A program made the position numbers and the translations under genes. Below the pieces are notes generated by a model, which was not told the DNA's origin, made no database searches, and worked only from the letters and a program-made list of their open reading frames with translations. This document shows, piece by piece, positions 1,459 through 42,795 of a DNA stretch of 42,795 nt; within the stretch, counting starts at the first letter, position 1; each line of letters opens with the position of its first letter. The DNA is from Octopus bimaculoides (Eukaryota), in assembly GCF_001194135.2 (NCBI RefSeq), contig NC_068989.1:19062492-19105286 (forward strand). The letters run 5' to 3'.

Positions 1459-3445
1459 ATTAGACAGTCATTTAATCCAGTTGAAAAGTCCGCTCACACT
1501 CTTTTTTTTTTTTTTTTTTTATTCTCTTTACATAAACCGTCGGAGCTACCCAGTCTGAATGGTAGGCTTTTTCAATTATATCTGGACTTTCTAGTCTTTC
1601 GAGCTCTTTTTTGACGTGGTATGACGCCACAAACGGCACGTTCCGTTTGGGCCGGGAGACGGGTGTTGTCTTTTCTTTTACTGCGATCCTCGCTTTCGTT
1701 TTAGTGCAACAGTTTATCCTTCCAAAAAAACACTTGGAAACAATTTTTTAATTTATTGTCTCAGTTATTCCACTTCGTTCGAACTTATGATCGTGCCAAC
1801 TACATTTTCACAGAGGACGCTAATGGGGGTGTCCCACATTTTGAATAACTCCATACATTCTGTGCCAAATAGGTTTAGTGATTTTTTCAACACATAAATG
1901 ATTGTCTTTTACGTTTCACCTCGAAAAGTTACATTGCAAATACATTACCGATGAAATATTTCTTTCTTGTAACACTATATGCTACTTTATTTGATTTAAA
2001 TAATTTCGGCTTTTCCGATTTGTCGCCATGTTTCTTCATTTATGATAGTGATGTTACTACCCGTATCTAGTTGCATTTTGACACTAGTGGTTTCGATTCT
2101 CATCTTGACGAATTTTGTGTCCGTTGTACAAACTTTTTTCTCTGATGCCAAACTATTTATTTTTTCTCGTTTGGTCCAGTTTTCCGTCATCTTAGCTCTG
2201 CAGTGCGATTTAATGTGTCCTGTGTTCCCACAACGAAAACACTTTGCTTTTTTGAACGGATACTCTTTTCTCAGGCGCCTACCACCGCATGCCATATAGG
2301 GGTTTATCTCCTGTTGTATATCGTCCTTTCCGTGAAACACTTTATCCGTCTTCCGACTCTTCCACACTGGTTTTATCTGTAAACAATCTCTGCGTTGGAT
2401 TTCTTCTGTGTCTTGCCTTACTTTTAATATCATATCGCACTCTTCTGACAAATTCTGGAGAGTTATATCCTGGTTCATTTCCAGCTTTGCGAGAATTTTC
2501 GTTCTGACTTCTGCGCCCTTTTCAGCAATAAGTCCCTGAACAAAAATCAAGATCTCTCTGTTGACTCTATCCGCATATGTGGTAACGTCTTCGTTATCAC
2601 TTTTCAAACACTTCCAATGTGTACTAAATAACGATGTTTTTCCACTAAACTTCCTACATAAAATGCCGATTGTGTCTGTGAAATTTATGTCAGAAACTTT
2701 TTTAGGCAATATAAAGTTACAATATTTTTCGTGCTCTGTCGGCACCAGTTTCCTCAGAATTAGACGAGTTTTCATTTGGTCAGTCCAGTCTTGGCATTCT
2801 TTTTCGAAAATTTGTTCAAATCTTCGGTATAGGCGCAGGAGTGGCTGTGTGGTAAGTAGCTTGCCTACCAACCACATGGTTCCGGGTTCAGTCCCACTGC
2901 GTGGCACCTTGGGCAAGTGTCTTCTACTATAGCCTCGGGCCGACCAAAGCCTTGTGAGTGGATTTGGTAGACGGAGACTGAAAGAAGCTCGTCGTGTATA
3001 TGTATATATATATATGTGTGTGTATGTTTGTGTGTCTGTGTTTGGCCCCCCAACATCGCTTGACAACCGATGCTGGTGTGTTTACATCCCCGTAACTTAG
3101 CGGTTTAGCAAAAGAGACGGATAGAATAAGCACTAAGCTTACAACGAATAAGTCCTGGGGTCGATTTGCTCGACTAAAGGCGGTGCTACAGCATGGCCGC
3201 AGTCAAATGACAGAAACAAGTAAAAGAGATAAAAGAGAAAGAGAATATGCCTTGAAGGTGACTACTTCTTTCGGGTCATATTTAAATTCCTTTATTGAAT
3301 TTGCTACGTGGTCTGGCGAAAACGTATTTTCCGGTTTTGTTACCAACTCCATTAGTTGTAGCATTTGTTGCTGTAACATTTGTTGTTCTTGTTGTTGCTA
3401 TTTTTGCAACTCAACTACACCCTGTAGTAAAAGAGATACGACAAT
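1459..3445 (-). mobile_element. Ty3/Gypsy LTR retrotransposon relic: gag, zinc knuckle, aspartic protease, start of RT
   Basis: EFKYDPKEVVTFKAY/YRRFEQIFEKEC gag motifs; CFRCGNTGHIKSHC (CX2CX4HX4C); protease LDTGS; RT N-terminus CTKTKARIAVKEKTTPVSRPKRNVPF...DWVAPTVYVK...RV*ADFSTGLNDCL. Contains stops and frameshifts and is split by a SINE at 2831-3244. Confidence 0.9.
2831..3244 (+). mobile_element. tRNA-derived SINE family B (CORE-like centre, internal TA/TG microsatellite), inserted in Gypsy gag
   Basis: aggcgcaggagtggctgtgtggtaag...gggttcagtccc head, ggcaccttgggcaagtg CORE-like block, tail ...gcatggccgcagtcaaatgac(a/t)gaaacaagtaaaaga. Confidence 0.9.
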
Positions 3446-7690: not shown

Positions 7691-8385
7691 ATGTATGTAT
7701 GTATGTATGTATGTATGTATGTATGTATGTATGTATGTATGTAGGTGTGAATGTGTGTGTGTATGTAAGTATGTATGTGCANNNNNNNNNNNNNNNNNNN
7801 NNNNNNNNNNNNNNNNNNNNNNNNNNNNNNNNNNNNNNNNNNNNNNNNNNNNNNNNNNNNNNNNNNNNNNNNNNNNNNNNNNNNNNNNNNNNNNNNNNNN
7901 NNNNNNNNNNNNNNNNNNNNNNNNNNNNNNNNNNNNNNNNNNNNNNNNNNNNNNNNNNNNNNNNNNNNNNNNNNNNNNNNNNNNNNNNNNCTTTGTTCCT
8001 ATGTATGTATGTATGTATGTATGTATGTATGTATGTAGGTGTGAATGTGTGTGTGTATGTAAGTATGTATGTGCATATGCATGTATGTATGTATGTAGGT
8101 GTGAATGTGTGTGCATATGCATGTATGTATGTATGTATGTATGTGTATGTAAGTATGTATGCATGTAGGTGTGAATGTGTGTCTATGTGTATAAGTATGT
8201 ATGTGCATATGTATGTAGGTGTGAATGTGTGTGTATATGTGTGTATGTGTGTAAGTATGTATATGCATATGTATGTATGTACGAATGTATGTATGTATGT
8301 ATGTATGTATGTATGTATGTATGTATGTATGTATGTATGTATGTATGTATGAATGTGTGCGTGTATGTATATGCGTATGTATGCC
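7691..8385. repeat. (TATG)n/(TG)n compound satellite spanning the gap at 7782-7990
   Basis: Direct reading; source of the His/Thr- and Met/Tyr/Val/Cys-rich pseudo-ORFs. Confidence 0.9.
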
Positions 8386-14010: not shown

Positions 14011-14246
14011 AAGGCGGCGAGCTGGCAGAAACGTTAGCACGCCGGGCGAAATGCTTAGCGGTATTTCGTCTGCCGTTATGTTCTGAGTTCAAATTCCGCC
14101 GAGGTTGACTTTGCCTTTCATCCTTTCGGGGTCGATAAATTAAGTACCAGTTACGCACTGGAGTCGATGTAATCGACTTAATCCCTCTCTCTGTCCTTGT
14201 TTGTCCCCTCTATGTTTAGCTCCTTGTGGGCAATAAATAAATAAAA
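14011..14246 (+). mobile_element. SINE family A (tail A1), full length
   Basis: Near-consensus copy. Confidence 0.92.
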
Positions 14247-14470
14247 AAACGTTAGCACGCTGGGCGAATTGCTTAGCGGTATTTCGTCTGCCGTTACGTT
14301 CTGAGTTCAAATTCCGTCGAGGTCGACTTTGCCTTTCATCCTTTCGGGGTCGATAAATTAAGTACTAATTACGCACTGGGGTCGATGTAATCGACTTAAT
14401 CCGTTTGTCTGTCCTTGTTTGTCCCCTCTGTGTGTAGCCCCTTGTGGGCAATAAAGACATAAGATAAGAA
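14247..14470 (+). mobile_element. SINE family A (tail A1), tandem second copy lacking the first ~18 nt
   Basis: Begins aaacgttagcacgc directly after the A-tail of the first copy. Confidence 0.9.
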
Positions 14471-16577: not shown

Positions 16578-17233
16578 NNNNNNNNNNNNNNNNNNNNNNN
16601 NNNNNNNNNNNNNNNNNNNNNNNNNNNNNNNNNNNNNNNNNNNNNNNNNNNNNNNNNNNNNNNNNNNNNNNNNNNNNNNNNNNNNNNNNNNNNNNNNNNN
16701 NNNNNNNNNNNNNNNNNNNNNNNNNNNNNNNNNNNNNNNNNNNNNNNNNNNNNNNNNNNNNNNNNNNNNNNNNNNNNNNNNNNNNNNNNNNNNNNNNNNN
16801 NNNNNNNNNNNNNNNNNNNNNNNNNNNNNCTCTCTCGCTCTCTCTATATGTATGTATGTATGTCACGCTGTATGAATTTTTGAAATAAAAAGATATTATC
16901 ATACACCAATTAATTCAGACTAGCGTGCTCATCAGGGGTTTTATTTCTGTACCAACCAAGACAAGGTTACTAGTCTGATTATATTAGTGTATAACAAAGA
17001 GGGTGTGCATGCGCGCGCGCACTCAATCACTCACACACACACACACATACACACACATACACACACACACACACACGCGCACACACGTTTAAAACAGATA
17101 TTTTATTGTCCAAGACAACGCTTTTATCCTGCTGAGTCGGCGCCGATCAGAACTTCTGCCGTTTCATATTGGATAGAGATATTAATAAATGATATTGAAG
17201 TAAAGATATATCTTTGATGCCATGTAAATAAAG

Positions 17234-17460: not shown

Positions 17461-18140
17461 NNNNNNNNNNNNNNNNNNNNNNNNNNNNNNNNNNNNNNNN
17501 NNNNNNNNNNNNNNNNNNNNNNNNNNNNNNNNNNNNNNNNNNNNNNNNNNNNNNNNNNNNNNNNNNNNNNNNNNNNNNNNNNNNNNNNNNNNNNNNNNNN
17601 NNNNNNNNNNNNNNNNNNNNNNNNNNNNNNNNNNNNNNNNNNNNNNNNNNNNNNNNNNNNNNNNNNNNNNNNNNNNNNNNNNNNNNNNNNNNNNNNNNNN
17701 NNNNNNNNNNNNNNNNNNNNNNNNNNNNNNNNNNNNNNNNNNNNNNNNNNNNNNNNNNNNNNNNNNNNNNNNNNNNNNNNNNNNNNNNNNNNNNNNNNNN
17801 NNNNNNNNNNNNNNNNNNNNNNNNNNNNNNNNNNNNNNNNNNNNNNNNNNNNNNNNNNNNNNNNNNNNNNNNNNNNNNNNNNNNNNNNNNNNNNNNNNNN
17901 NNNNNNNNNNNNNNNNNNNNNNNNNNNNNNNNNNNNNNNNNNNNNNNNNNNNNNNNNNNNNNNNNNNNNNNNNNNNNNNNNNNNNNNNNNNNNNNNNNNN
18001 NNNNNNNNNNNNNNNNNNNNNNNNNNNNNNNNNNNNNNNNNNNNNNNNNNNNNNNNNNNNNNNNNNNNNNNNNNNNNNNNNNNNNNNNNNNNNNNNNNNN
18101 NNNNNNNNNNNNNNNNNNNNNNNNNNNNNNNNNNNNNNNN

Positions 18141-22571: not shown

Positions 22572-24436
22572 NNNNNNNNNNNNNNNNNNNNNNNNNNNNN
22601 NNNNNNNNNNNNNNNNNNNNNNNNNNNNNNNNNNNNNNNNNNNNNNNNNNNNNNNNNNNNNNNNNNNNNNNNNNNNNNNNNNNNNNNNNNNNNNNNNNNN
22701 NNNNNNNNNNNNNNNNNNNNNNNNNNNNNNNNNNNNNNNNNNNNNNNNNNNNNNNNNNNNNNNNNNNNNNNNNNNNNNNNNNNNNNNNNNNNNNNNNNNN
22801 NNNNNNNNNNNNNNNNNNNNNNNNNNNNNNNNNNNNNNNNNNNNNNNNNNNNNNNNNNNNNNNNNNNNNNNNNNNNNNNNNNNNNNNNNNNNNNNNNNNN
22901 NNNNNNNNNNNNNNNNNNNNNNNNNNNNNNNNNNNNNNNNNNNNNNNNNNNNNNNNNNNNNNNNNNNNNNNNNNNNNNNNNNNNNNNNNNNNNNNNNNNN
23001 NNNNNNNNNNNNNNNNNNNNNNNNNNNNNNNNNNNNNNNNNNNNNNNNNNNNNNNNNNNNNNNNNNNNNNNNNNNNNNNNNNNNNNNNNNNNNNNNNNNN
23101 NNNNNNNNNNNNNNNNNNNNNNNNNNNNNNNNNNNNNNNNNNNNNNNNNNNNNNNNNNNNNNNNNNNNNNNNNNNNNNNNNNNNNNNNNNNNNNNNNNNN
23201 NNNNNNNNNNNNNNNNNNNNNNNNNNNNNNNNNNNNNNNNNNNNNNNNNNNNNNNNNNNNNNNNNNNNNNNNNNNNNNNNNNNNNNNNNNNNNNNNNNNN
23301 NNNNNNNNNNNNNNNNNNNNNNNNNNNNATTAAATACGCTTTACACCGCTTAAACTGCCAAAGGAGTAAGTGTAAACAGCTGAATACTTGTCAGTGATTG
23401 GTTGAAATTATCGAAATAAGACAATTGTTTACATGAAATAACTCCGAATACAAAAATTTTTTTCTGTTCTATAACACAAAATAGATAAGTATACGAAGTT
23501 TGAAAGTCTTTCGGTACCAAAAACACTACATAAAACATAAATGAAAACTGGTGCCCCCGTTTTGAGCTAGATCCGAAAATGACTCTCCCCAGACACAACA
23601 GAATATGCTTCAACACACGAAATCACATAAAAAATCTTGCAAACCAAATCCAAATACAGCACTCTTGATTTTTCTCTCACCTAAATCTTTACCACTGTAT
23701 ATCATGATGGTTAAAATTTATAGATATACTCAGAAACAAACCAGAAAAAGCGTTGATACAAACACTGTTTAACGCACCATTAACTTATTAATCAAACGTG
23801 ATACCAAGAATTTGCTTTAATATGCGAATCGTTCTATCCAATTTACATAAGTTCTTAGTAATAACAGGTTTGTAAGCAGTGTTTCTCTGTGGATAGTTAA
23901 GACGGTACCTTTCTGATGATGTCCCTGTACAAGCTTGAAATTCTTCTGTTCACAAAGTTATTGTCTACAGAGGTGAAATGTTTCTATACATACAGTGTTG
24001 GCTGAAGCCTATTGATATACAAAATAGTATACGTATGTGTGCGCACAGCTATAAACGATGCTAATATGTTAAAATCAAATGTATATTTTAAACATATATT
24101 ATAAACTTACTTTGAGATATAAATGCATATAGTGAGCGGTGATCCAACAAAAGTGCCCCTAAGTGCTCTCTCGACGTGCGAGAAAGATCAACGAGATCTC
24201 CCTCAAATTGCACTCTACGTATAAAAAGAAAATGTCGAAGGACACATTGGACCATTGGTGGAAAATCAATGATCCTCTGCGACGTTTTTTCTATAGTTCA
24301 ATAGATATATATATATATAATTATATTTCGTACTTTCCTTGCAGAAATATTTCTCTTTGAGTGTGTGTGTGTGCGCGACGTCTCCTTGTAGCCTTTCTTT
24401 CTCTGCTGTGAACATATCAAATTTTAGTAACCATGT

Positions 24437-26384: not shown

Positions 26385-27667
26385 TAACTAAAAATAATTG
26401 TGCAACAAAGGAAAAACAGTAGGCGGAGTTAAGCAAATCTACTCATGTGTGCCCCTTCCCCAACGACTCTGTCTCCTCATAACTCCCACTAAAATGGATA
26501 TTTTTTCAATGAAATTTTCTACAAATATGCTTCAGATGGTGTAGAGTTCGATTATGTCGAAATTTGTTATGAAAAAGATGTCTATGGGTGCTGAGAGGAG
26601 TTTCGGAAAATTCACACGAGTTGANNNNNNNNNNNNNNNNNNNNNNNNNNNNNNNNNNNNNNNNNNNNNNNNNNNNNNNNNNNNNNNNNNNNNNNNNNNN
26701 NNNNNNNNNNNNNNNNNNNNNNNNNNNNNNNNNNNNNNNNNNNNNNNNNNNNNNNNNNNNNNNNNNNNNNNNNNNNNNNNNNNNNNNNNNNNNNNNNNNN
26801 NNNNNNNNNNNNNNNNNNNNNNNNNNNNNNNNNNNNNNNNNNNNNNNNNNNNNNNNNNNNNNNNNNNNNNNNNNNNNNNNNNNNNNNNNNNNNNNNNNNN
26901 NNNNNNNNNNNNNNNNNNNNNNNNNNNNNNNNNNNNNNNNNNNNNNNNNNNNNNNNNNNNNNNNNNNNNNNNNNNNNNNNNNNNNNNNNNNNNNNNNNNN
27001 NNNNNNNNNNNNNNNNNNNNNNNNNNNNNNNNNNNNNNNNNNNNNNNNNNNNNNNNNNNNNNNNNNNNNNNNNNNNNNNNNNNNNNNNNNNNNNNNNNNN
27101 NNNNNNNNNNNNNNNNNNNNNNNNNNNNNNNNNNNNNNNNNNNNNNNNNNNNNNNNNNNNNNNNNNNNNNNNNNNNNNNNNNNNNNNNNNNNNNNNNNNN
27201 NNNNNNNNNNNNNNNNNNNNNNNNNNNNNNNNNNNNNNNNNNNNNNNNNNNNNNNNNNNNNNNNNNNNNNNNNNNNNNNNNNNNNNNNNNNNNNNNNNNN
27301 NNNNNNNNNNNNNNNNNNNNNNNNNNNNNNNNNNNNNNNNNNNNNNNNNNNNNNNNNNNNNNNNNNNNNNNNNNNNNNNNNNNNNNNNNNNNNNNNNNNN
27401 NNNNNNNNNNNNNNNNNNNNNNNNNNNNNGGTATGCTCAGAGTTGTTCCACTGAGTTCAAATCATGCCGAGGTCAACTTCACTTCCCATCCTTCCAGAGG
27501 CGATAAAAAAAGTAAGGATATTGGACCAGATGCTTTGTAGTGTTTTTTCAGTTTCTTTACGTTCGTGGCCTATTGAGATGGTATTCTCGCATTCACTTGC
27601 ATTGGTCAAAGCCCCGCTTTGACCAATGCGAGTGAATTTGAGAGACGGAAATGTGTTGAAGCATGCA

Positions 27668-28437
27668 TAATGGAAACACCTTAAAATTTCAAACAAATCT
27701 ATTTTAATATGGGGTAGGACCACCTTTTGCAGTAATTACAGCTTGAATTCTACGAGATATGGACTTGTACAAAGTTTGAATTGTTTGCAAACGAATTTTT
27801 GTCCATTCTTCAGCTAAAACAGTCTCCAGTTCTTGCAGTGATGATAGTGAAGGATATCGACTCCTTACCTGTTTTTCTAAAATACACCATAAATGTTCAA
27901 TAATATTGAGATCTGGGGACTGTGGTGACCAGATAAGATGTTCAACTTCACTAGAATGTTCCTCGTGCCATTCAGTAACAACTTTAGCTGTGTGAATTGG
28001 TGCATTATCATTCTGAAAGATTGCATTTCCCTCCGGAAACAGTTCCGCATCCATAGGATGAATTTGATCAGATAAAATGCTTAAATAGTCTTGNNNNNNN
28101 NNNCTGTAGATTTTTTTCTCCAACTCTAAACGCTTTGCAACGTTTGTTTTTGAAAGCAGTGGTTTTCTGATTGTAGCCCCCACCCCTGAAATCCGGCTTT
28201 GTGCCACTCCCGGCGAACAGTTTTTGTGGAGACTGGGTTCCCGATGTGGTCATTAAGCTCTGTAGTAATTTTGGGAGCTGTACTTTTGTGATCCTTTCTA
28301 ACAATTCGCGTAAGAGTCCGACGGTTCATATCTGAAATTTTGTTTTTCTTTTCCCGGAGTTTTGTTTCGACGAGGAGGATGTTCCCTCTTTCTCAAAGAC
28401 TGTCATTACTTTTAAGACAGTACTTCTTGATACACCA
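27668..28437 (-). mobile_element. Tc1-like transposon relic, DD36E catalytic spacing
   Basis: HTH region GVSRSTVLKVMTVFEKEG...RRTLTRIVRKDHK...VSTKTVRRE; catalytic FQNDNAPIH...WSPQSPDLNIIEHLW...RRIQAVITAKGGPTPY; the middle is replaced by a 10-N gap. Confidence 0.92.
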
Positions 28438-31363: not shown

Positions 31364-31489
31364 ATGGCTGTACTACGTAGTCGGTTTCCTGTAGTTGTAT
31401 TAGGTGCCACTGGAACTGGTAAATCTAAACTCGCCATTGAACTTGCTAAAGTATTTTCTGGCGAAATAATAAATGCTGATTCCATGCAG
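31364..31489 (+). CDS. TRIT1: tRNA dimethylallyltransferase (IPP transferase), first visible coding exon
   Basis: [42 protein letters not shown] with P-loop GATGTGKS and EIIxADSMQ, diagnostic of MiaA/Mod5/TRIT1; aacATGG context; CAG|GTAAGT donor at 31490, phase 0. The true start codon is uncertain. Confidence 0.93.
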
Positions 31490-32869
31490 GTAAGTTGTTT
31501 CCATTCTAATGACTCTCATGGCCTGTTTTCTTCTATCGATTAGCGAAGCTTTTACTCCACGTGCTACCAAGCATTTTCTATTTTGCTATCTTCCTTCGCT
31601 CACTTTTCATCAGGGCTTTTGTTTTTATTTTAAAGAATAAGGACCTATATTTCGTTCTAGGAAATCTTAAAATTTTTATCTTTGTTTACAAAAATTTTCT
31701 AAATTTCTGTTGTTTCTTTTTCTTTTCGTAGAACAGCGTTTAAATTATTAGAAGATTATGTCATTTACATCGACTCTGGTCCACGTTTACCATTATGTGT
31801 ATATGTACCATTATATATATATATATATATACATATATATNNNNNNNNNNNNNNNNNNNNNNNNNNNNNNNNNNNNNNNNNNNNNNNNNNNNNNNNNNNN
31901 NNNNNNNNNNNNNNNNTTAATCGAAAGTTAACAACAGTGGAAATGAGTAGTACATATATGCATATGTAGGAGGAATTTCAAACATATGAACCATTTCTGT
32001 AGAAAATATGTTGTGTAATGAATGTACTTTACAATAGGTAGACACCTTTTTTTCGTCTTGAGAAGGTAAAAAACGGAAGCTGAAAGGTTAATATATAATC
32101 GTCTTCGTTTCGTTATTTTTCTTTACTATTAAAATGTAATAATAATGTATAATGTTTGAAATTTTCGATGTTTTCCTTATATCTAGTGAAAACTAAAATG
32201 TTGAGAAGTTGCACATTTTCCTCGTCTTACACATTATGTATGCAACACATGCATTCGTACACAGTTATTCTTACACCTGCATATATATATATATATATGT
32301 ATTATGTATGTGCGTGTATGTTGAATGTGTTTATAAATAGTTATCATATATAAAGTTTATATTCATGATTGGTTGATTATATATATACACAAACAAATCT
32401 ACATGTGCGTATAATTTTACAAGTTTAATTTTAATGTGTTATCTTTATAAATGAGTATTATGTATGTGCGTCTATATTCTCTTAGATAAAGCCGAAAGTG
32501 CAGTGGAAATCAGTTAAACAAAAAACAAAACATCTAAATGACCTACAATATTTCGCCTACCAAAGTGCAATTGTTGCAGAAAGTGTTTCACACCTGCTTG
32601 TGAATGCACCTCCCCCCCTGTTAATCACTCGACCATTAAGTGGGTGTGACCTTTATTTTTAACCAGGTGAAGCAGTAGAGTAGAATATTGGTGCTTTATC
32701 TGAAAGTATTATAGTAAAGTTATTAACAAGGCCTCAACTAATGGCCAGCTCTCTTCCATTCATTTGTGTAAAACTTTAAATTGACAGGATGCCCGTCTTA
32801 TCACTTAACTATTGAATTGTGAAAGAAGGAATGAAAACTAATTTTTAGCATCCAAACTACCTGAAACAA

Positions 32870-33640
32870 GCAAATGGCTAATTGATTAGATGAAATGCAG
32901 TTTTGCTTTGTGCCAGGGAGAAGCACTACTGCTGTCTTTATAGTTATAGAACTGCAGGAGAAGTATTTGGTTAAGAATAAACCATTCTCATTGGTATTTG
33001 TTGACTTGGAGAAAGCCTTTGAGTACCCTGCTGTGTGATATGGTGAGCTTTGAGGAAGTTAGGAGTAGACAAGTGGTTTGTGAAAGCTGAACAGGCCATG
33101 TACAGAGTTTCTGTTAGTTGGAGGAGGATGTATGGAAAATGCAGTTGAATAAGAATAGGATAGAGAAAATTCAGAGAGCTTTTACCTCTGTTGGCAACCA
33201 AAGGTCTCTCTCCCTAAGTGAAAAGAAGTTTGTATGATGCCTGTGTACAAACTGCAACGCTACATGGTAGTGAGACGTGGGCCCGGCATGCAAAGAACAT
33301 ACGAAGACGAAAGAGGAATGAAGCTAGCCTGCTCTGCTGAATGTGCAGTGTTAGTGTACATAGGTGATAGTGTAAGTGTACTGAGAGAAAAGTGAGGCAT
33401 TAGAGGAATTAAATACAGTGTGCATTAGAGAACACTGTGCTGGTTTGGTTGTGTGATGTGTATGGATGTGGACAGTTGGATAAAGAAGTGCCAATCACTT
33501 AAAGTGGATGGAAGTTGTGGAAGAAGGAAACCTTGGAAGACATGGGATGAAGTATTGAAGGTTGATCTTAGGATGCAGAGCCTTATGAAGGAGATGATGA
33601 AGGACCGAGATATCTGGCACTTTGTGCTGTACTTTAGAAG
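32870..33640 (+). mobile_element. RTE-clade LINE relic (RT and C-terminus, internally deleted)
   Basis: LQEKYL..FVDLEKAF, LYDACVQTATLHGSETW, GRRKPWKTWDEVLKVDL. Confidence 0.85.
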
Positions 33641-33679
33641 ACTCATCCACCAAGGAAGTCATCTTGGTCATGCTTGTCC

Positions 33680-34260
33680 ATAAGGGAGCTCTGCCCCACT
33701 CTCACCTCCATCCCCTCTGACCTGTCTACCTTTTTCTCCCACACTTCATCTTACACCCACTGGTTTTCTGTCATCTGAGAGCTGAGTAGTCGCTACATCC
33801 CTCCTGCTTTTTATGCCCCCCCCCATTTCCCATTATCTCCTGTCTACACCAATCACCACTTTTCTGTACCTTCTTGCCTCTATGTTATTCTCCATTATTA
33901 ACAACTTCCTCTTCTTCTATCACCTTTAGTGCCATCACATGTCCACCATAATCCCTGCCTGTCTCCTATATTTCACTCCATCATTTGCTATGGTCACCTC
34001 TTTCCTGCATATCCACCCTATCCAAGCCTGTGCATCGCCTCATTTATTCTCTCCACCCCCTATGTTCTTTGAGGACTTGTCTTGAGACATTTTCGCCACC
34101 ATCTCTCTCACTATTGCTCTATATATCTTACTCTCTAACTTGCTCTCCCTTCTCTTTGAACTCCAAGAATCTCTTCTACAAGACATCTATCCTTATCCTT
34201 CTATACCTTTAGTCTCTCATCTGGCACAAATCCACCCCCTCCTCAATACTACTCTTGCCT
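33680..34260. repeat. Pyrimidine-rich low-complexity tract, probably old retroposon UTR; similar tract at 41580-41880
   Basis: C/T-rich composition between two RTE pieces. Confidence 0.4.
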
Positions 34261-34289
34261 TCCCAGCTGAGGTATCAAATTGTTAGGCT

Positions 34290-35620
34290 AGGTTATGAAA
34301 GTTACAGAGAAGGTCAAAGTTTAACTAATTAGGAAGTGAGTTAACCTGGATAAGATGCAGGTGAGTTTTGTGCTACGTAGGAGCACTACTAGTGCTATCT
34401 TACTGATAAGGCAACTGCAGGAGAAGTATTTAGCCAAGAATTAACCTCTGTACTTGGCTTTTGTAGATTTAGAGAAAGCCTTCGACAGAGTACCCTGTTC
34501 CCTCATCTGGAGGTCAATGCAGAAGCGAAGGATAGATGAGGTGGTTGGTGAGAGCAGTAAAAGCCATGTACAGTGATGCTGTCAGTAAGGTGAAGGTCAG
34601 GAATTAAGTGTACACATAGGAGTACACCAAGCATTGGTTCTCAGCCCTCCCTTGTTTATCATAGTCCTCCGAGCCATAACAGAGGAATTTAAGATTGGCT
34701 ATCCTTGGGAGCTTCTCTATGCTGATGACCTTGTTCTTATAGCTGAATCACTACCTGAACTTGAGAAGAAATTTCAGGTGTGGAAGCATGGTCTGAAATC
34801 AAAAGGCCTTAGAGTTAATTTAGTTAGGAAAAAGGACAAATTTCAAATCCCAGCATGGAGATGGCCCTGTTCAATATCTAGGAAAGGTGTTGGTAGAAAC
34901 TCCTTGTGGTGTATCCAGCGCTATCATGCAAAGGTTAATAGAAAAAGTAGACTTTGTGTGTGGCAGATGTGCAGGTACAATAAACACTAAAAATGTACAG
35001 AGAATCGACTTCCTCAAATGTTGGTAGGATGTATGGGTGCCCTTAGAAATAGTAGATGGCTCCCGTTACCTATGTGATGAAGTCAGTAGTGGAGGAGGAA
35101 GTTCTGAAAGCATAGTTGCTAGAATAAGAATAGGCTGGGCAAAGTTCAGAGAGCTACTACCTTTGTTGGTAACAAAGGGCCTCTTCCTAAGAGTGAAAGG
35201 CATATTGTATGATGCCTGTGTATGTACAGCTATGCTACATGGCAGTGAAATATGGGCTGTTATTATATAGGACATGCATAGGCTTGAAAGAAATGAAGCC
35301 ACTATGCTCCACTGGATTAGTAATGTCTGTGTGCATGTATGGCAGAGTGTAAATGATTTAAGAGAAAAATTAGGTATAAGAGGCATCAGCTGTAGTGCGC
35401 AAGAGAGAAGTTTGTGCTGGTATGGTCATGTGATGCATATGGATGAGAACAGCTGTGTAAAGAAGTGCTGATCTCTAACTGTGGAAGGGGTAAACTCCCA
35501 AGAAGATATGGAATGAAGTGGTGAGAAAGGATCTTCAGATGTTGGGCTTCACAGAAGGGATGACAAAGGTCTGAGACTTTTGGTGGTTTGCTGTGCTTAA
35601 GAAGACATGTCAATTTAAAT
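34290..35620 (+). mobile_element. RTE-clade LINE relic
   Basis: FVDLEKAFDRVP, LSPPLFII, LLYADDLVL (YADD at 34718-34729), RIRIGWAKFRELLPLL, LHGSEIW; frameshifted. Confidence 0.9.
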
Positions 35621-35689
35621 AAACTCTGGCCATCCATACATACAGGTATGTCCTCTGTTCCTCTCTAAGCTGAGAGGTTTTTCTCTTGA

Positions 35690-35810
35690 GGATTTGTGGG
35701 TGCTGGTGTCATGTAAAAAGCACTTTTGCTGGTACCACATAAAAAGCACTCAATACACTCTGTGAAGTGGTTCATTTTAGGAAGGGCATCCAGCCGTAGT
35801 AATCATACCA
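35690..35810 (+). mobile_element. RTE-type 3' UTR fragment
   Basis: ggtgtcatgtaaaaagcac repeats and ggaagggcatccagccgtag. Confidence 0.6.
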
Positions 35811-36083
35811 CAATAGGTAATCGGGACCTATATAAACACTTAATTCTTGGACACCTCTCAAAACCAAAACTGACACCAGTCAGTATCACTTTAATTACCA
35901 AATTCTCCTTAAATTGCACCCTACCATTTTAAATAAAGGACATATAAAATAATGTATTCCTAGATACCCCTTAAAAGACAGAGTGGTCACAACTGGAATG
36001 CCATTGCTTATAAGTTTGCTCAAGTAGGGCCAACTAAGTGCTAAACAATGTTAACTAACTTACATTATCATTAGCTTTTGATA

Positions 36084-36280
36084 CATCATCATCGTTTAAC
36101 GTCCGCTTTCCATGCTAGCATGGGTTGGACGATTTGACTGAGGACTGGTGAAACCGGATGGCAACACCAGGCTCCAGTCTGATTTGGCAGAGTTTCTACA
36201 GCTGGATGCCCTTCCTAACGCCAACCACTCCAGAGAGTGTAGTGGGTGCTTTTACGTGTCACCCGCACGAAAACGGCCAC
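36084..36280 (-). mobile_element. Young RTE-type 3' tail copy
   Basis: catcatcatcgtttaacgtccgctttccatgctagcatggg; retains CpGs. Confidence 0.85.
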
Positions 36281-36314
36281 GAAAGAGTATCGCGAAAGGC
36301 CTGGTTGGAGGCCT

Positions 36315-36451
36315 AACCTTCCAAGTTCTTTTATAGGGCTTAGAAAAACTGAAGGACCGCTGCAATAAGTGTATGAATCTAAGAGGGGAATATGTTGAAT
36401 AAAATCATAATTAACTGATCCTCCTGTATTTTCTTTTAGTACCCCCTCATA
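36315..36451 (+). mobile_element. mariner transposase C-terminus and 3' TIR
   Basis: GLEKLKDRCNKCMNLRGEYVE* followed by agtaccccctcaTA. Confidence 0.75.
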
Positions 36452-37000
36452 ATTAGTACTATTTAACGTGATTAGAAGTTCAATGTAAGAGACAATTTTT
36501 ATGGTGTGCCATTTGGACAACATTGATGAATCATGATAACCTGTTATAAAAGATGTTTGAAGGTTTGAACTTAGTATTGTACACTAACATAGTTATTGTA
36601 AATACAGCACTAGACACTCATTTCTTCTCATCAACATGCTGTGGCTAGACTGAATTTTTTCTATTATCATGTCAATTGTTGTCAATGCTAGGAAAAGCTT
36701 CTTTCAGTGGTTTTTTTTTCTTGTTTTCCTCTGTCTAATTATTAATATATATAACCTGTGTCAGTTTCTGTTTATTTAACCAACACTCTTATACAGGTAC
36801 AAGACTAACTTCCCAGACACTGGTGATAATCCACACCAATTTACAAGCAGGGGTCCCGCGATTATCAGACAAGTTTCCTGGTACCTTGAACAGAATAGTA
36901 CCTTGCATATTACATCATCATTGACATCATTAAATGTCCCTTATACAGTATTAACTTGTATCAATTATATTAATGTGCAGGTACCTGTATTTTATTTAAT

Positions 37001-37290
37001 TCATCATCACCATCATTTAACATCTGTTTTCCATGCTGGCATGAGTTGGATGGTTTGAGGGGAGCTGGTAAGACCAAGTGCCACACCAGACTCTTGTCTG
37101 CTTTGGCATGGTTTCTGTGGCTGAATGTCCTTCCTAATGCTAACCACTTTACAGAGTGTACTGGGTGCTTTTTACATGGCACCATCACCAGTGCTTTTTA
37201 CATGGAACTGGCACCAATGTTTCTTATGTGACACCAACACTGGTACTTTTTGCATGGCACCAACACTGGTGCTTTTTACATGGTACCAGC
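37001..37290 (-). mobile_element. Older RTE-type 3' tail with tandem gtgctttttacatggcacc repeats
   Basis: Divergent, CpG-decayed paralogue of 36084-36280. Confidence 0.8.
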
Positions 37291-37563
37291 ACCAACAGAA
37301 TCACCAAGTAAAACTTGCAAGACAAAAACTCCTTCAGAATAATTATTTAAGTGAATTTAATATCTAATTTATATTGTGTTGACCAAAGTGGCTATCCCTG
37401 GTTCAAAAAAATCTGTAATCTGTAAAGGCTTCAGAATCTTTGATTCTCCAAAAAATCAATGTTGTACCAGTATTCTATATCCTATGTCAGTTTCTAGTTG
37501 TTTAACCAACATTTCTCGATATTGTTATTGTATTAACTCTAAATGTTGCTCTTCCTATTGCAG

Positions 37564-37704
37564 GCATACAAAGGATTGGATATTATTACCAACAAGGTCA
37601 CAGCAGAGGAAAGAGCTGAATGTCCACATCATTTGTTGGACTTTGTCAGCCCTTTAAATTTTAAATACACCATAGCTGATTTCCAAGCAGCTTCTATACC
37701 TATT
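37564..37704 (+). CDS. TRIT1: tRNA dimethylallyltransferase, second visible coding exon (141 nt)
   Basis: Acceptor cttcctattgcag|; AYKGLDIITNKVTAEERAECPHHLLDFVSPLNFKYTIADFQAASIPI (YxGLDIxTNK and HH motifs); in phase 0 with the previous exon. Confidence 0.93.
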
Positions 37705-37713
37705 GTATCCTTT
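37705..37713 (+). promoter_or_regulatory. U12-type (minor spliceosome) 5' splice site GTATCCTTT
   Basis: Exact consensus where IPT homology stops. Confidence 0.85.
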
Positions 37714-38534
37714 TACTTAAATATATCAACTATGACATATATTATACAATCTTAAAGCTACTTTTATCCATTTCGTATTAAATTAGTGTGGAGGATTTAA
37801 AATAATCCCCAATTGCTGTCAGATCACAGTACGATATGCTTCCCTTAAAAACTAAAGTTTTGTTTTCATTCACCTTGTTGCTTTTCATTTATTGGGCTGA
37901 TCTATGACCCTTCCCCATTGTTTTTAGGGATATAGGATGTCTAGGGTATATTAGCCAATGTATCCTTGCTTTCCCAAGACTAGGGTTTGATCTGTGTACT
38001 ATTTGGCTACTATTTCTAGCTGATCATATAGATCAAGTCCAAGGACATTATTTGTAATATTGGACAGCGTTATTTGTAGCCTTGCTTAAAGATTTCTTAC
38101 ATGGATGCCAATATCTGTCAGTATGATTGCTCTGGAAAGGATTTTAAACACTGGGTCCACCTATTATCACATACAAAAGCAATATGTGGTAATAGGTGGA
38201 ATTTTTAGGCTCTAGTGTGAAAGACTAAGGGTCAAAGGTTAACTTCAGGTTGCATGGCGTGAGGTTAGTGAAAAGTATATATCCTTGAGGAGGAAATGTA
38301 CCAGAGTATTGCAGGAAACATTTTCAGATGGACTATTGCTGGTCTCTAATTCTAAAGCATTTCCACCTAGGATGTAGGCCCCTGTTCAGTTACTGAGGTC
38401 ATGTAGAATAAAGTGTTCTGACCAGAGGTGTAACAAAAAGCTATGGGCCATCAACAGGTAACCTCAATATCTTATTTACTCAGGTGCCTTACCTTTAGAA
38501 GAAGAATTGATTGTCTTCAGAAATTGACACTTTA

Positions 38535-38917
38535 TCTCTTTATCTTTTATTAGTTTCAATCATTAGATTGTGGCCATGCTGGGGTATCTCCTGAATTTTA
38601 GTTGAACAAATCAACCCCAGTACTTGTTTTTTTTGAAGCCTGGTACTTGTTCTGTTTGTCTCTTCTGCCAAACTGCTAAGTTACAGGGACATAAACATGC
38701 TAACATTGGTTGTCAAGTGGTAGTGGGGGATAAATACACATGCACACACACACACACACGTATGATGGGCTTTCAGTTGCCATCTACCAAATTTACTTAC
38801 AAGGCTTTGGTTGGCCTAAGGCTATAGTAGAAAACACTTGCCAAAGGTGCCATGCAGTGGGACTGAACCAGGAACCATGTGGCTGGAAGGAAACTTCTTA
38901 CTATACACACCTCCACC
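38535..38917 (-). mobile_element. SINE family B, old and CpG-decayed
   Basis: Divergent reverse copy with internal (CA)n. Confidence 0.8.
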
Positions 38918-40781
38918 TTTGTTATTATTTTGTCTTCATGTTTTTATTTTGTTCGTCATATGATTAATCATAAATTGAAATGATATAGAATAATAATGTA
39001 TTGTACAGAGATAAACTATAGATCTTGTCATGTACAAAATGTTGATCACTTATAGATGACATTAATCAGTGCTTCAATACTGTTTCTGTAGCATTATGAA
39101 AATGATAGACAAACTCTCATAGAACATGAAGTTACCATATTTGATTGATGGTAAATAAAACACACTTTTTTTCCCCCAAAAAAGCATCTCAAAAATAATC
39201 GCTCCAGGCTCTATATGCAAAGTTGGGTCTTTCATAAGCTAATTTTGTCCCTAGCTCTCACTTCTTCTTGAACATGTGCTGCTGAAATCCGGGTGTGTCT
39301 AATATGCTCATGCATCTTTTATGCCATTAAATGCAGTAATCTGTTGTGGATAACTTTCCTAGAAAAGCCTATTACCTATTTCCCACAGTTAGGTGTAATA
39401 AACCTTTGTACAGTCGTTTTGGCCAAATGACTACAACTCACAAATGTTATTGTGTTAGAGGACTATGTACTGAATCATGTAGGAAGGAACAATCTTATTA
39501 CTTTAAAAGTCTGTTACTTATTTTGTCAGTCTCTTTGAGGACTTAAAGAAACCAACACTGGTTGTCAAGTGGTGGTGGGGACAAATACAAAGGCACACAT
39601 ACACTTATATAATATACCTTGCGGGGAGAGAGAGTTCTTATATAGACACCTGTCAACATGGTAAGTATTCTAAACATCTGTATGTGATAGGAGATGGTTT
39701 CTTAGGTCCTAGGGTAAGAAATTAGGTCATTGTTTAGTCTTAGTTTCATAGAATATAGTATCAAATAGATATCCTCCTTGGATAGGAAGCATAACAGCAT
39801 TTTGCAATAAACATTTCCACACGGAATATGGTTGGTCTCTATTCTGTACTGAGGCTATGGAGAATTAAAGTGTTCTGATTAGAATCATAACAAAATGCTA
39901 TGTCCAATAAACATATTCATTCAATTATCTTACCTCTAAACTAAGAATTAACTGTAGAATCTGGCAAATTCTCCTGTGCATCTCTATTATTTTGTGTTCA
40001 GAATAAACTTGGCTCTTGGATGCCTGTCCAACCCATGTCAACATGGAAAAGCAGATGTACAATGATGATTGTGATCATCTTCCCCAGCAGCTAGACAGGC
40101 ATCCTATCCAGAGTTCCTTTTCTTATCTGCCATGAAATTAGACAAAGAATCAACCCAATTCTTTCTTGACCACATCTTTCTTAAGCAGTGTTCAAGTTTA
40201 ACATTAACTATATTGATATTGATCTCACTTGTCTAAGAAAGCTAATGAAGGCTGACGAGACTAATTATAAAAATAAATTTACTAATTTAGAGCTTTAAAC
40301 CAGTTCTTAATTCAAAAAAAAGTAGTGAGTAAGAATTTGTCTAGTTGTAACTTGTTGATAGTTTGATCACAAATGCCTGACAAAACTAGTCACTTCAGAA
40401 ATAGTTTGGAGTTAATAGCTAGTTTGATTTAGCCTCTTTGTAGCTGATGAAATATTACAGAAGCTGATGAAATATTTTAGGGGCTGATAAAATAAATACT
40501 ACATAGTAAATATACTGTGAGAAATTATCAAAACTTGATTAGCTTATTGACCAATTAAAAAAAAATTTTATATCGTGTTTTCAATTCATATATGCAAGTA
40601 TGGCTCTGTGGTTGGGAAGCCTGCTTTCCATTTATATAGTCTCAGATCAGGTCAACTATGTAGCACTTTGGGCAAGTCCTAGGCTGCCCAAAGTCTTGTG
40701 AGTGAATCCTATCGAACTATCCAGTCCATGCCAGCAGGGAAAATCGATTTTAAATGATGAAGATGATGATAATGCCATGCT

Positions 40782-41200
40782 AGGTGCTGCTGTGTGGTAA
40801 GATGCTTGCTTCCCAGTTACATGGTTGCAAGTTCAGTCTCACTGTGTAGAACCTTGAGCAAGTATCTTCTGTAGTCTTGGGCCCACTAAAGCCTTGTAAG
40901 CTTGTAAGTGAATTTGGTGGGTGGAAATTGAAAGAAGCCCATTGTGTGTATGTATGTGTGTGTGTGTGTGTGTGTATGTGTGTACACACACGTGTCTGTG
41001 TTTGTTCCTCACCACTGCTTGACAACCAGTGTTGGTGTGTTTACATCCCTGTAAATTAGTGGCCCAGCAAAAGAGATTGATAAAATAAGTACCAGGCTTA
41101 AAATTTAATAAGTTTCAGGGTGAATTTATTTGATTAAAACTTCTTCAAGGTGGTGCCCCAGCATGGCTGCTGTCTAATGATTGAAACAAGTTAAAGAAGA
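40782..41200 (+). mobile_element. SINE family B, old and CpG-decayed
   Basis: ctgtgtggtaag...gcttgacaaccagtgttggtgtg...ggtggtgccccagcatggc...ttgaaacaag. Confidence 0.8.
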
Positions 41201-41879
41201 GACAAAATCATTTTCCGTACTGATCCACTGTTTTGCTGAATCTTTGATCTGGTACTTAATTCTTTGTTCTTCAGTTTACCTACCCAGGTAATGAGTTCTG
41301 GGAAACTTAAACTTGAGTCAATTAGCCACTTACTCTTGGATGAATTTCTCTGCTACTTAATTTTGCCATAGCTGGAATTATGAAGTTTTATGTTTTGAAA
41401 ACATTTCACTTGGTTTTGTATTATTTTCTCATCTTTGTTTAGTTGAGCAGGGCTGTAATGGTCTCTGCTTCTAAGAAATTGTTTGACTCCTACTCTGACT
41501 AACATTTTCTCTCATACTCATGTATTTTATGTGCTAGACATAGTGTACTAACCAAGTTTTTTTTTCTTGGTCTCATAACTGCATCCTTTAGACTTTCCCC
41601 TCCCCAGTTTTCTGGGTTTTTTTTTCACTCTACCCACACTTCACCTCATTCCCCTTACCTGCCCACCCAGCCATCCTAGATTTTATGACCCCTTCTATTT
41701 TGTTTCTCTATCCACCTTTTTGTACCTTGAGTGTATGCCCTGATACTTTATTTCCACCATCCTTTCTCCCTTTCCTGCTGGGATACCCATGTATCTCATC
41801 TGCATCAAGACATTTACTTCTGTCCCTCTATCATACTTTACCCTCTCAGCACCTGGAAACAATGCCACCTTCCTCAGTA

Positions 41880-42134
41880 CTGCATCCCCATTCTGTGAAG
41901 GGGTTTTGTAAGTTATTTGGTGACCTCACTAGTGTTGGTGCTATGAAATAAGCACCCAGTACATTTTGTAAAGTGGTTGGCATTAGAAAGGGCATTCAGC
42001 ATAGACCCTACCATTGGAACTTGGCACATTCTTTGGCTTGTTGGCTCTTGTTGAACTGTCCAACCCATGCCAGTATGGAAGATGGACATTAAATGATGGT
42101 AATATTCAGTTGTTGTCATCATCATCATCATCAT
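41880..42134 (+). mobile_element. Old RTE-type 3' tail
   Basis: ggttggcattagaaagggcatt...ccatgccagtatggaagatggacattaaatgatg...(CAT)n. Confidence 0.75.
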
Positions 42135-42468
42135 TTGTATCTCTATTTTTTCCTCCCATGTTTGTAAGGGTTAGATGAGCCATACTATATCATGTTTTTT
42201 TCCCTCTTTTCTGCCACATAGATTAAGAGGGAAACTGCTAGACCTTGTTATTGTGTAGGTCATGTGTTTTGGCAAGTATTTTTATAGCTGGATGTCCTAT
42301 CACCTTACACTTTACAGCATAGAATGGGTGTACTTTATTATGCTACTGCATTGAGAGTCTGTCTTCTGCCTTATGCAAGGTTTTATCTATATATATAAAA
42401 CAAAGTTTGTGTGTGTGGTACTTATGTTCCTTACAAATTCAAAAACTGAGTTGCTGATTTTGACATAC

Positions 42469-42795
42469 GAGCGAATCAATTTAGATGAGATGCAGTTTGG
42501 GTTCGTGCCAGGTAAAAGCACTACTGATGCCTTATTTCTAGTGAGACAGTTGCAGGAGAAATACCTAGCTAAGGATAAACCTCTGTACCTGGCTTTCGTT
42601 GACATGGAGAAAGCCTTTGACAGGGTCCCCCGATCCCTTATCTGGTGGTCAATGAGGAAACTTGGGATAGAAGAATGGTTAGTGAGAGCTGTGCGAGCCA
42701 TGTACAGAGATGCTGCCAGTAAGGTGAGGGTTGGAAATGAGTACAGCAATGAATTCCGGGTAGAGGTAGGGGTCCACCAAGGTTCCGTCCTCAGC
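42469..42795 (+). mobile_element. Young RTE LINE RT fragment, open frame running off the window end
   Basis: ERINLDEMQFGFVPGKSTTDALFLVRQLQEKYLAKDKPLYLAFVDMEKAFDRVPRSLIWWSMRKLGIEEWLVRAVRAMYRDAASKVRVGNEYSNEFRVEVGVHQGSVLS; 109 codons with no stop. Confidence 0.93.

What the first reader, a model, noticed from the sequence alone, without database searches (positions are those of the whole stretch)
37705..42795. TRIT1 carries a U12-type minor intron, over 5 kb long and filled with transposons
Seen: exon 2 ends ...ATACCTATT|GTATCCTTTTAC, an exact U12 donor, with no good U2 donor nearby. I could not find the expected next exon (about I.DIF.[11 protein letters not shown]) or a canonical TCCTTAAC branch site before the window ends, so the intron exceeds 5 kb. 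Established: U12 introns are rare, ancient and can limit expression. Inference: minor-spliceosome control of i6A37 tRNA modification, probably at a position conserved across animals. I have not verified whether vertebrate TRIT1 has a U12 intron here.
Basis: partly seen in the sequence, partly recalled or inferred. Interest (0 to 1): 0.7.

Follow-up and report, generated by a model that had tools for sequence, protein, structure and literature searches.

The report
Conserved U12 minor intron in octopus TRIT1
The octopus gene for the tRNA-modifying enzyme TRIT1 has a rare "minor-spliceosome" intron after its second exon, but other animals have the same intron at the same spot and human TRIT1 is already listed as a minor-intron gene, so this is real but ordinary.

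Summary
The window is Octopus bimaculoides chromosome CM046609.1. TRIT1 exon 1 (31364-31489) ends with a perfect U2 donor (CAG|GTAAGT). Exon 2 (37564-37704, phase 0) ends ...CCT ATT|GTATCCTTTTAC, a 9/9 match to the U12 donor consensus, and no usable U2 donor lies nearby.

The orthologous intron sits at the same codon and phase and is U12-type at both ends in five other bilaterians:
- GT-AG with a TCCTTAAY-like branch site in Aplysia, Elysia and the spider Argiope.
- AT-AC in the hemichordate Glandiceps and the fish Larimichthys.

Human TRIT1 and mouse Trit1 are already listed among minor-intron genes.

The octopus 3' end could not be inspected. Exon 3 ([20 protein letters not shown]... in O. 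vulgaris and O. sinensis) is absent from the window and from the 2.8 kb of resolved sequence beyond it. The O. vulgaris gene spans about 350 kb, so the intron is probably far longer than 5 kb.

At least 30% of the intron inside the window is recognisable repeat: two SINE-like copies and a reverse-transcriptase fragment that runs into an assembly gap.

A practical by-product: the RefSeq annotation splits the gene at this intron, into a 105-aa read-through model and a separate 362-aa C-terminal model.

The parts
31364..31489 (+). TRIT1 exon 1 coding part (42 codons, [42 protein letters not shown]), followed by the U2-type donor CAG|GTAAGT
31490..37563 (+). Intron 1 (6,074 nt, U2-type GT-AG). It contains a 76-nt N gap and reverse-transcriptase fragments (34634-34990)
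37564..37704 (+). TRIT1 exon 2 (47 codons, phase 0 at both ends)
37705..37713 (+). U12-type 5' splice site GTATCCTTT (9/9 of RTATCCTTT)
37705..42795 (+). 5' part of intron 2 (the minor intron). The 3' end lies beyond the window
37705..37755 (+). Read-through codons VSFYLNISTMTYIIQS plus stop, which form the C-terminus of the annotated 105-aa RefSeq model. This is intron sequence, not a conserved exon
38530..38907 (+). Copy of a dispersed repeat of about 400 nt (SINE-like), with at least 8 further copies in the window and extension
40789..41206 (-). Second copy of the same dispersed repeat, inverted relative to the first
42490..42795 (+). Reverse-transcriptase (RVT_1) fragment of a retroelement, running into the assembly gap. 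Related copies are in intron 1
37960..37967 (+). Second GTATCCTT motif inside the intron (possible decoy; unexplained)
38279..38286 (+). ATATCCTT motif inside the intron (possible decoy; unexplained)

Best explanation
Intron 2 of Octopus bimaculoides TRIT1 (tRNA A37 isopentenyltransferase) is a GT-AG-subtype U12 (minor-spliceosome) intron. It is orthologous to the U12 intron at the same phase-0 codon position in other bilaterian TRIT1 genes.

Shown: the donor GTATCCTTT lies at the exact conserved exon boundary; no U2 donor is available; and the orthologous introns are U12-type at both ends.

Inferred: U11 and U6atac recognise this donor. U12 pairs with a TCCTTRAY branch site about 10-15 nt upstream of an AG that lies far downstream (more than 5 kb away, probably tens of kb). 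Exon 2 is then joined to an exon beginning ATT GAA AAT... ([20 protein letters not shown]).

The intron has been inflated by SINE-like and LINE insertions, as is usual for octopus introns. Any rate-limiting or regulatory effect on TRIT1 expression is a generic property proposed for minor introns and is not shown here.
For: - Sequence and reading frame of the exon 2 / donor boundary.
- The exon 1-2 product is 100% identical to an O. bimaculoides TRIT1-like protein with Pfam IPPT.
- Homology to the full-length O. vulgaris TRIT1 (P0356) is 87/89 identical and stops exactly at ...IPI. After that the octopus orthologues continue [20 protein letters not shown], while the window reads intron.
- Orthologous introns at the same codon and phase:
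  - Aplysia: ATC|GTATCCTTTT...TGTCCTTAATGGAGTTCAG|, 403 nt.
  - Elysia: ATT|GTATCCTTCA...TATCCTTAACTTATTCTGTACAG|, 793 nt.
  - Argiope: ATT|GTATCCTTTA...ATTCCTTCATTTCTTGTTAG|, 549 nt.
  - Glandiceps: ATC|ATATCCTTTT...TTTCCTTGACTCAGATGAAC|, 6,243 nt.
  - Larimichthys: CTG|ATATCCTTTT...CCTCCTTAATCGCTGGAAC|, 2,442 nt.
- In each of these loci, RTATCCTT occurs on the coding strand only at this donor, plus once overlapping the Elysia branch site.
- No alternative U2 donor exists near the octopus boundary.
- TRIT1 is named among human minor-intron genes (PMC7507305), and mouse Trit1 was assayed as a U12-intron gene (PMC4601534).
- Molluscs are relatively rich in minor introns, and Octopus sinensis was part of a survey of more than 3,000 genomes (PMC10639083).
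Against: - The octopus 3' splice site and branch point were not seen. Exon 3 is not in the window or in the 2.8 kb of resolved sequence after it.
- No TCCTTRAY occurs on the + strand in the available intron sequence.
- DNA of the larger octopus gene models could not be fetched because their ranges are too long.
- The current RefSeq model does not splice here. It reads through to a stop, giving a 105-aa product, so annotation-level transcript support for this junction is lacking in this species.
- No RNA-seq was available.
Confidence: 0.9

Rival explanations
1. The intron is now spliced by the major (U2) spliceosome. The donor keeps a U12-like sequence, but the 3' end has converted to a U2-type branch site and polypyrimidine tract.
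For: The 3' end is unseen. GT-AG U12 introns are the subtype that can convert to U2 type, which is established knowledge. The boundary has GT at +1/+2, so U1 recognition is not formally impossible.
Against: The donor matches the U12 consensus at 9 of 9 positions and MAG|GTRAGT at only 4 of 9. Conversion normally goes with decay of TATCCTT. Three other protostome orthologues keep both the U12 donor and the U12 branch site.
Confidence: 0.04
2. The window holds only a truncated copy or remnant of TRIT1 (exons 1-2). The 105-aa read-through product, ended by intronic termination, is what this locus really makes, and the functional enzyme is encoded elsewhere.
For: RefSeq annotates a 105-aa 'tRNA dimethylallyltransferase-like' protein that ends in intron sequence. 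The C-terminal 362-aa model is a separate gene record. The assembly is full of N gaps.
Against: Exons 1-2 are intact and 87/89 identical to the N-terminus of the full-length O. vulgaris and O. sinensis proteins. The C-terminal model lies on the same 96.9-Mb chromosome record. No second N-terminal model turned up for the species. The same kind of truncated read-through model ([I/V]-S-F... = RTATCCTTT) occurs in Larimichthys (which also has a full-length model), Polypterus (likewise), Naja and Megalops. That points to a gene-prediction artefact at this intron.
Confidence: 0.05
3. The U12-like 9-mer at the exon boundary is a coincidence and says nothing about the splicing machinery.
For: RTATCCTT occurs 5 times in the window against 3.1 expected, so the motif by itself is not enriched.
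Against: At one fixed position the chance is about 5e-5. The same motif sits at the same codon in five other phyla-spanning orthologues, each paired with a U12 branch site.
Confidence: 0.01

Closest known systems
Minor (U12-type) intron of vertebrate TRIT1 (human TRIT1 is among the 699 minor-intron-containing genes; mouse Trit1)
   Same: Same gene. The fish orthologue has the intron at the same phase-0 position between the '...ALSL' and 'IDD...' codons. The donor core is TATCCTTT.
   Different: The vertebrate and hemichordate introns are AT-AC subtype, whereas the octopus (like gastropods and a spider) starts with GT. The octopus intron is longer than 5 kb and TE-laden, against 2.4 kb in the fish. 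The exact intron number in human was not checked with tools; only the gene-level listing was read.
GT-AG U12 intron of gastropod TRIT1 (Aplysia californica, Elysia chlorotica) and spider TRIT1 (Argiope bruennichi)
   Same: Identical position, phase and donor: CCT ATY|GTATCCTT. The flanking residues P-I | I-(E/D/N) are the same.
   Different: Those introns are 403-793 nt with a visible TCCTTAAY/TTCCTTCAT branch site. The octopus 3' end is out of reach and the intron is at least 6-13 times longer.
U11-binding splicing enhancer (USSE) of SNRNP48/RNPC3: tandem U12 donor motifs used for regulation
   Same: The octopus intron carries two further RTATCCTT motifs on the sense strand, 255 and 574 nt after the real donor.
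   Different: From my own knowledge, USSE motifs are about 30-40 nt apart and conserved. Here the spacing is hundreds of nt, and the extra motifs are absent from the five orthologous introns. This is not a member, only a loose resemblance.

Membership tests
U12-type (minor-spliceosome) intron | 5' splice site |RTATCCTT(T) directly at the exon boundary | tested here: met
   37705-37713 = GTATCCTTT, immediately after the last conserved codon
U12-type (minor-spliceosome) intron | Branch-point sequence TCCTTRAY about 8-20 nt upstream of the 3' splice site, with no polypyrimidine tract | not testable with these tools
   Octopus exon 3 is outside the window and outside the extra 5 kb. DNA of the long gene models was withheld. 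The feature is met in all five orthologues examined.
U12-type (minor-spliceosome) intron | Terminal dinucleotides GT-AG or AT-AC | tested here: inconclusive
   The 5' GT is seen. The 3' end is unseen.
U12-type (minor-spliceosome) intron | Poor fit to the U2 donor consensus, so that classification does not depend on a single motif | tested here: met
   ATT|GTATCC matches MAG|GTRAGT at 4 of 9 positions. The exon 1 donor of the same gene is CAG|GTAAGT.
U12-type (minor-spliceosome) intron | Orthology to established U12 introns (same position and phase) | tested here: met
   Five orthologous loci. TRIT1 is listed as a minor-intron gene in human and mouse.
U12-type (minor-spliceosome) intron | Removal depends on U11/U12/U4atac/U6atac snRNPs | not testable with these tools
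   Needs RNA-seq or a knock-down experiment.
TRIT1 / MiaA tRNA isopentenyltransferase (Pfam IPPT, PF01715) | N-terminal P-loop G-x-T-G-x-G-K-S and the D-S-M-Q-x-Y-x-G-L-D-I-x-T-x-K motif | tested here: met
   GATGTGKS and ADSMQAYKGLDIITNK are encoded in exons 1-2. Precomputed Pfam hits PF01715/PF01745 on P0001.
TRIT1 / MiaA tRNA isopentenyltransferase (Pfam IPPT, PF01715) | Remainder of the IPPT domain and the C-terminal zinc finger present in the same gene | tested here: inconclusive
   Not in the window. Present in a separate 362-aa model on the same chromosome (P0410) and in the full-length O. vulgaris and O. sinensis proteins.

The most novel reading that the evidence does not exclude
In octopus the ancient TRIT1 minor intron has grown to tens of kb or more than 100 kb: the O. 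vulgaris gene spans about 350 kb for 583 codons. It has also acquired a cluster of extra U12-donor-like motifs just downstream of the real donor. These could act as U11 decoys or enhancers, and together with frequent read-through they could yield a truncated P-loop-only 105-aa product. Minor splicing would then be a real bottleneck for i6A37 tRNA modification in cephalopods.
Probability: 0.07. Interest if true: 0.45.

Novelty: already known. Interest (0 to 1): 0.15.

Why it matters
Mostly for annotation. The RefSeq gene set of O. bimaculoides splits TRIT1 at exactly this intron, into a 105-aa read-through stub and a 362-aa C-terminal model. Exon 3, which encodes the conserved VGGTNYY substrate-binding segment, is in neither. 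Similar stubs ending in [I/V]-S-F (= RTATCCTTT translated) exist for several fish and a snake.

Recognising the U12 donor lets the two models be merged. It also flags a recurring failure of gene predictors at minor introns.

Biologically, it adds one more case of a minor intron kept at one position across Bilateria, AT-AC in the two deuterostomes and GT-AG in the four protostomes sampled. It opens no new question.

Tried and rejected
1. Searched the window and the 5-kb extension for exon 3 and later TRIT1 exons, using motif regexes and tblastn with ten full-length TRIT1 proteins. Only exons 1 and 2 are present.

2. Tried to fetch the DNA of the O. vulgaris full-length gene and of the O. bimaculoides C-terminal model, to see the acceptor.

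3. The first protein search with the 89-aa query returned only short proteins. A profile of C-terminal regions returned no cephalopod in its top 120. A chimeric query (octopus N-terminus plus an X-masked consensus) finally surfaced the Octopus cluster.

4. Four of the twelve contig look-ups gave no DNA: the Stegodyphus, Ptychodera and Zootermopsis proteins are not on record, and the Cimex gene range is too long. No insect was therefore examined.

5. Rfam and tRNA scans of the window found nothing, so there is no intronic snoRNA or tRNA-like hit at threshold.

6. Looked for the intron number of the human and mouse TRIT1 minor intron in supplements. None are held.

7. Considered a U11-binding enhancer (USSE) for the three clustered RTATCCTT motifs. 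Rejected as a membership claim because the spacing is wrong and the motifs are not conserved.
Full report
**Where the window comes from.** The spliced translation of the two coding segments is 100% identical over 89 aa to the protein 'tRNA dimethylallyltransferase-like [Octopus bimaculoides]' (P0001, Pfam IPPT). That protein's gene lies on CM046609.1 of GCA_001194135.2. Locus L001 overlaps the window base for base, with window coordinate = L001 coordinate + 21363.

**The observation.**
- Exon 1 is 31364-31489. It encodes MAVLRS...GATGTGKS...ADSMQ and is followed by CAG|GTAAGT, a textbook U2 donor.
- Exon 2 is 37564-37704, preceded by ttcctattgcag. It encodes 47 codons (AYKGLDIITNKV...FQAASIPI) and ends in phase 0.
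- The next bases are GTATCCTTTTAC. GTATCCTTT matches the U12 donor consensus RTATCCTTT at all nine positions, but MAG|GTRAGT at only four of nine.
- Every other GT from 37564 to 38004 scores 6 of 9 or lower. Each lies inside conserved coding sequence or behind the in-frame stop at 37753-37755.
- The 8-mer RTATCCTT is not enriched in the window as a whole: 5 found against 3.1 expected. The significance therefore rests on position, not on count.

**Is this the true exon end?**
- Full-length TRIT1 proteins from ten animals align to the window only over exons 1 and 2. The alignments degrade exactly after ...IPI.
- The full-length Octopus vulgaris protein (P0356, 583 aa) and O. sinensis XP_029641982.1 (P0411) are 87/89 identical to the window's exons 1-2. 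They then continue [26 protein letters not shown], whereas the window continues VSFYLNISTMTYIIQS and a stop.
- The annotated 105-aa O. bimaculoides protein is simply exon 1 + exon 2 + read-through of GTA TCC TTT TAC....

**Orthologous introns.** I fetched five TRIT1 loci and mapped exons 2 and 3. All have an intron at the same codon boundary in phase 0, and all are U12-type at both ends.

| Species | Donor | 3' end | Length |
|---|---|---|---|
| Aplysia californica | ATC\|GTATCCTTTT | TGTCCTTAATGGAGTTCAG\| | 403 nt |
| Elysia chlorotica | ATT\|GTATCCTTCA | TATCCTTAACTTATTCTGTACAG\| | 793 nt |
| Argiope bruennichi (spider) | ATT\|GTATCCTTTA | ATTCCTTCATTTCTTGTTAG\| | 549 nt |
| Glandiceps talaboti (hemichordate) | ATC\|ATATCCTTTT | TTTCCTTGACTCAGATGAAC\| | 6,243 nt (AT-AC) |
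| Larimichthys crocea (fish) | CTG\|ATATCCTTTT | CCTCCTTAATCGCTGGAAC\| | 2,442 nt (AT-AC) |

- In each locus the only RTATCCTT on the coding strand is this donor, plus one overlapping the Elysia branch site.
- Truncated gene models from Polypterus, Naja and Megalops end in I-S-F or I-S-S right after the homologous residue. That is what ATATCCT(T/C)T translates to. This is consistent with the same intron in other vertebrates, but it is inferred from peptides only.
- Literature: TRIT1 is named among human minor-intron-containing genes (PMC7507305). Mouse Trit1 was assayed among U12-intron genes (PMC4601534). A survey of more than 3,000 genomes reports molluscs as relatively rich in minor introns and includes Octopus sinensis (PMC10639083).

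**The 3' end and the length.**
- No exon 3 and no TCCTTRAY motif occurs on the + strand from 37705 to the window end, or in the following 5 kb from L001.
- In that extension, window-equivalent 42796-44666 and 47468-47755 are N gaps. Exon 3 could in principle hide in a gap. However, the sequence entering the first gap is a reverse-transcriptase fragment, so the gap more likely holds the rest of a retroelement.
- The O. vulgaris gene spans 349.5 kb.
- In O. bimaculoides the C-terminal 362 aa are annotated as a separate gene (XP_052826426.1, P0410). It lies on the same chromosome and itself spans 165.6 kb.
- The intron is thus at least 5.09 kb and probably tens of kb. Its exact length and its branch site could not be determined with the tools at hand.

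**Content of the intron inside the window.**
- Self-comparison of the window plus extension marks 1,553 of 5,091 nt (30.5%) as dispersed repeat.
- There are two copies of a SINE-like family of about 400 nt, at 38530-38907 and 40789-41206, in opposite orientation. At least eight further copies lie elsewhere in the window and extension.
- There is an inverted partial copy of the 26-nt tandem repeat that lies just upstream of exon 2.
- There is an RVT_1 fragment at 42490-42795 (E=1.2e-10).
- 30.5% is a lower bound, because only 47 kb served as the 'repeat library'.
- No Rfam family or tRNA is present.

**Mechanism.**
- Shown: a consensus U12 donor sits at a boundary where five orthologues have complete U12 introns.
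- Inferred: the donor is recognised by U11 and U6atac, a distant TCCTTRAY branch site by U12, and splicing joins ...CCT ATT to ATT GAA AAT....
Nothing here tests it.

**Rivals.**
- Conversion to U2-type splicing with a fossil donor (about 4%). This is unlikely given the perfect donor and the retention of both U12 signals in three other protostomes.
- A truncated gene remnant whose real product is the 105-aa stub (about 5%). Against this: intact and conserved exons, a C-terminal model on the same chromosome, and the recurrence of the same read-through artefact in species that also have full-length models.
- Pure coincidence of the motif (about 1%), excluded.

**Side observation.** Three of the five RTATCCTT motifs in the window lie on the sense strand within 575 nt, at 37705, 37960 and 38279. 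A first-order Markov simulation gave such a cluster in 3 of 1,500 runs. The contexts share no further similarity, and the orthologous introns lack extra motifs. The test is post hoc, so I record it as unexplained.

**Verdict.** The feature is nevertheless a known, deeply conserved minor intron of a gene already catalogued as minor-intron-containing. Its practical value is in repairing the split O. bimaculoides gene model.

Noticed in passing
window 37705, 37960, 38279 (+ strand): Three RTATCCTT (U12-donor-like) motifs lie within 575 nt at the start of the intron. The whole window has only five on both strands. A cluster of 3 or more within 600 nt arose in 3 of 1,500 Markov simulations. The extra motifs are absent from the five orthologous introns. 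They may be decoy donors or chance.
   Followed up: partly
window 31364-37755; O. bimaculoides proteins P0001 and P0410: The RefSeq annotation splits TRIT1 at this intron, into a 105-aa read-through model and a separate 362-aa C-terminal model (XP_052826426.1) on the same chromosome. Exon 3 and part of the linker exon are in neither.
   Followed up: yes
proteins P0003, P0005, P0009, P0019 (fish, snake): Several short 'hypothetical protein' or TRIT1 models in vertebrates end in I-S-F or I-S-S straight after the homologous residue. That is a translation of ATATCCTTT, meaning read-through of the AT-AC minor intron, a recurring gene-prediction artefact.
   Followed up: partly
loci L002-L006: The U12 subtype follows phylogeny in this small sample: GT-AG in the four protostomes (octopus donor, two gastropods, spider) and AT-AC in the two deuterostomes (hemichordate, fish).
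   Followed up: partly
window 36994-37294 vs 41927-42103 (and extension 46054-46243): The 26-nt tandem repeat (5 copies, 37165-37294) about 270 nt upstream of exon 2 has inverted partial copies in intron 2, so inverted repeats flank exon 2. No consequence was tested.
   Followed up: no
window 38530-38907 (+) and 40789-41206 (-): Two copies of the same SINE-like family sit in inverted orientation 1.9 kb apart in the intron, 67.5% identical over 422 nt. Together they could form a long imperfect hairpin in the pre-mRNA.
   Followed up: no
window 1996-3066 (-), 27704-28207 (-), 34634-34990 (+): Transposable-element protein fragments occur elsewhere in the window: a gag-like ORF with DUF7083, a zinc knuckle and the start of an aspartyl protease; a Tc1-like DDE_3 transposase fragment interrupted by Ns; and a reverse-transcriptase fragment in intron 1.
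   Followed up: partly
window 7782-7990, 16578-16829, 17461-18140, 22572-23328, 26625-27429, 31841-31916, and directly after 42795: The window has many runs of N (assembly gaps), and it ends exactly where a 1,871-nt gap begins. Absence of an exon from this assembly is therefore weak evidence.
   Followed up: yes
window 14029-14462: A 218-nt unit is repeated twice in tandem at 92% identity. It contains a tRNA-like box-B-type segment (GGTTCAAATTCCGCCGAGGTCGAC), probably a SINE head, though ARAGORN calls no tRNA.
   Followed up: no
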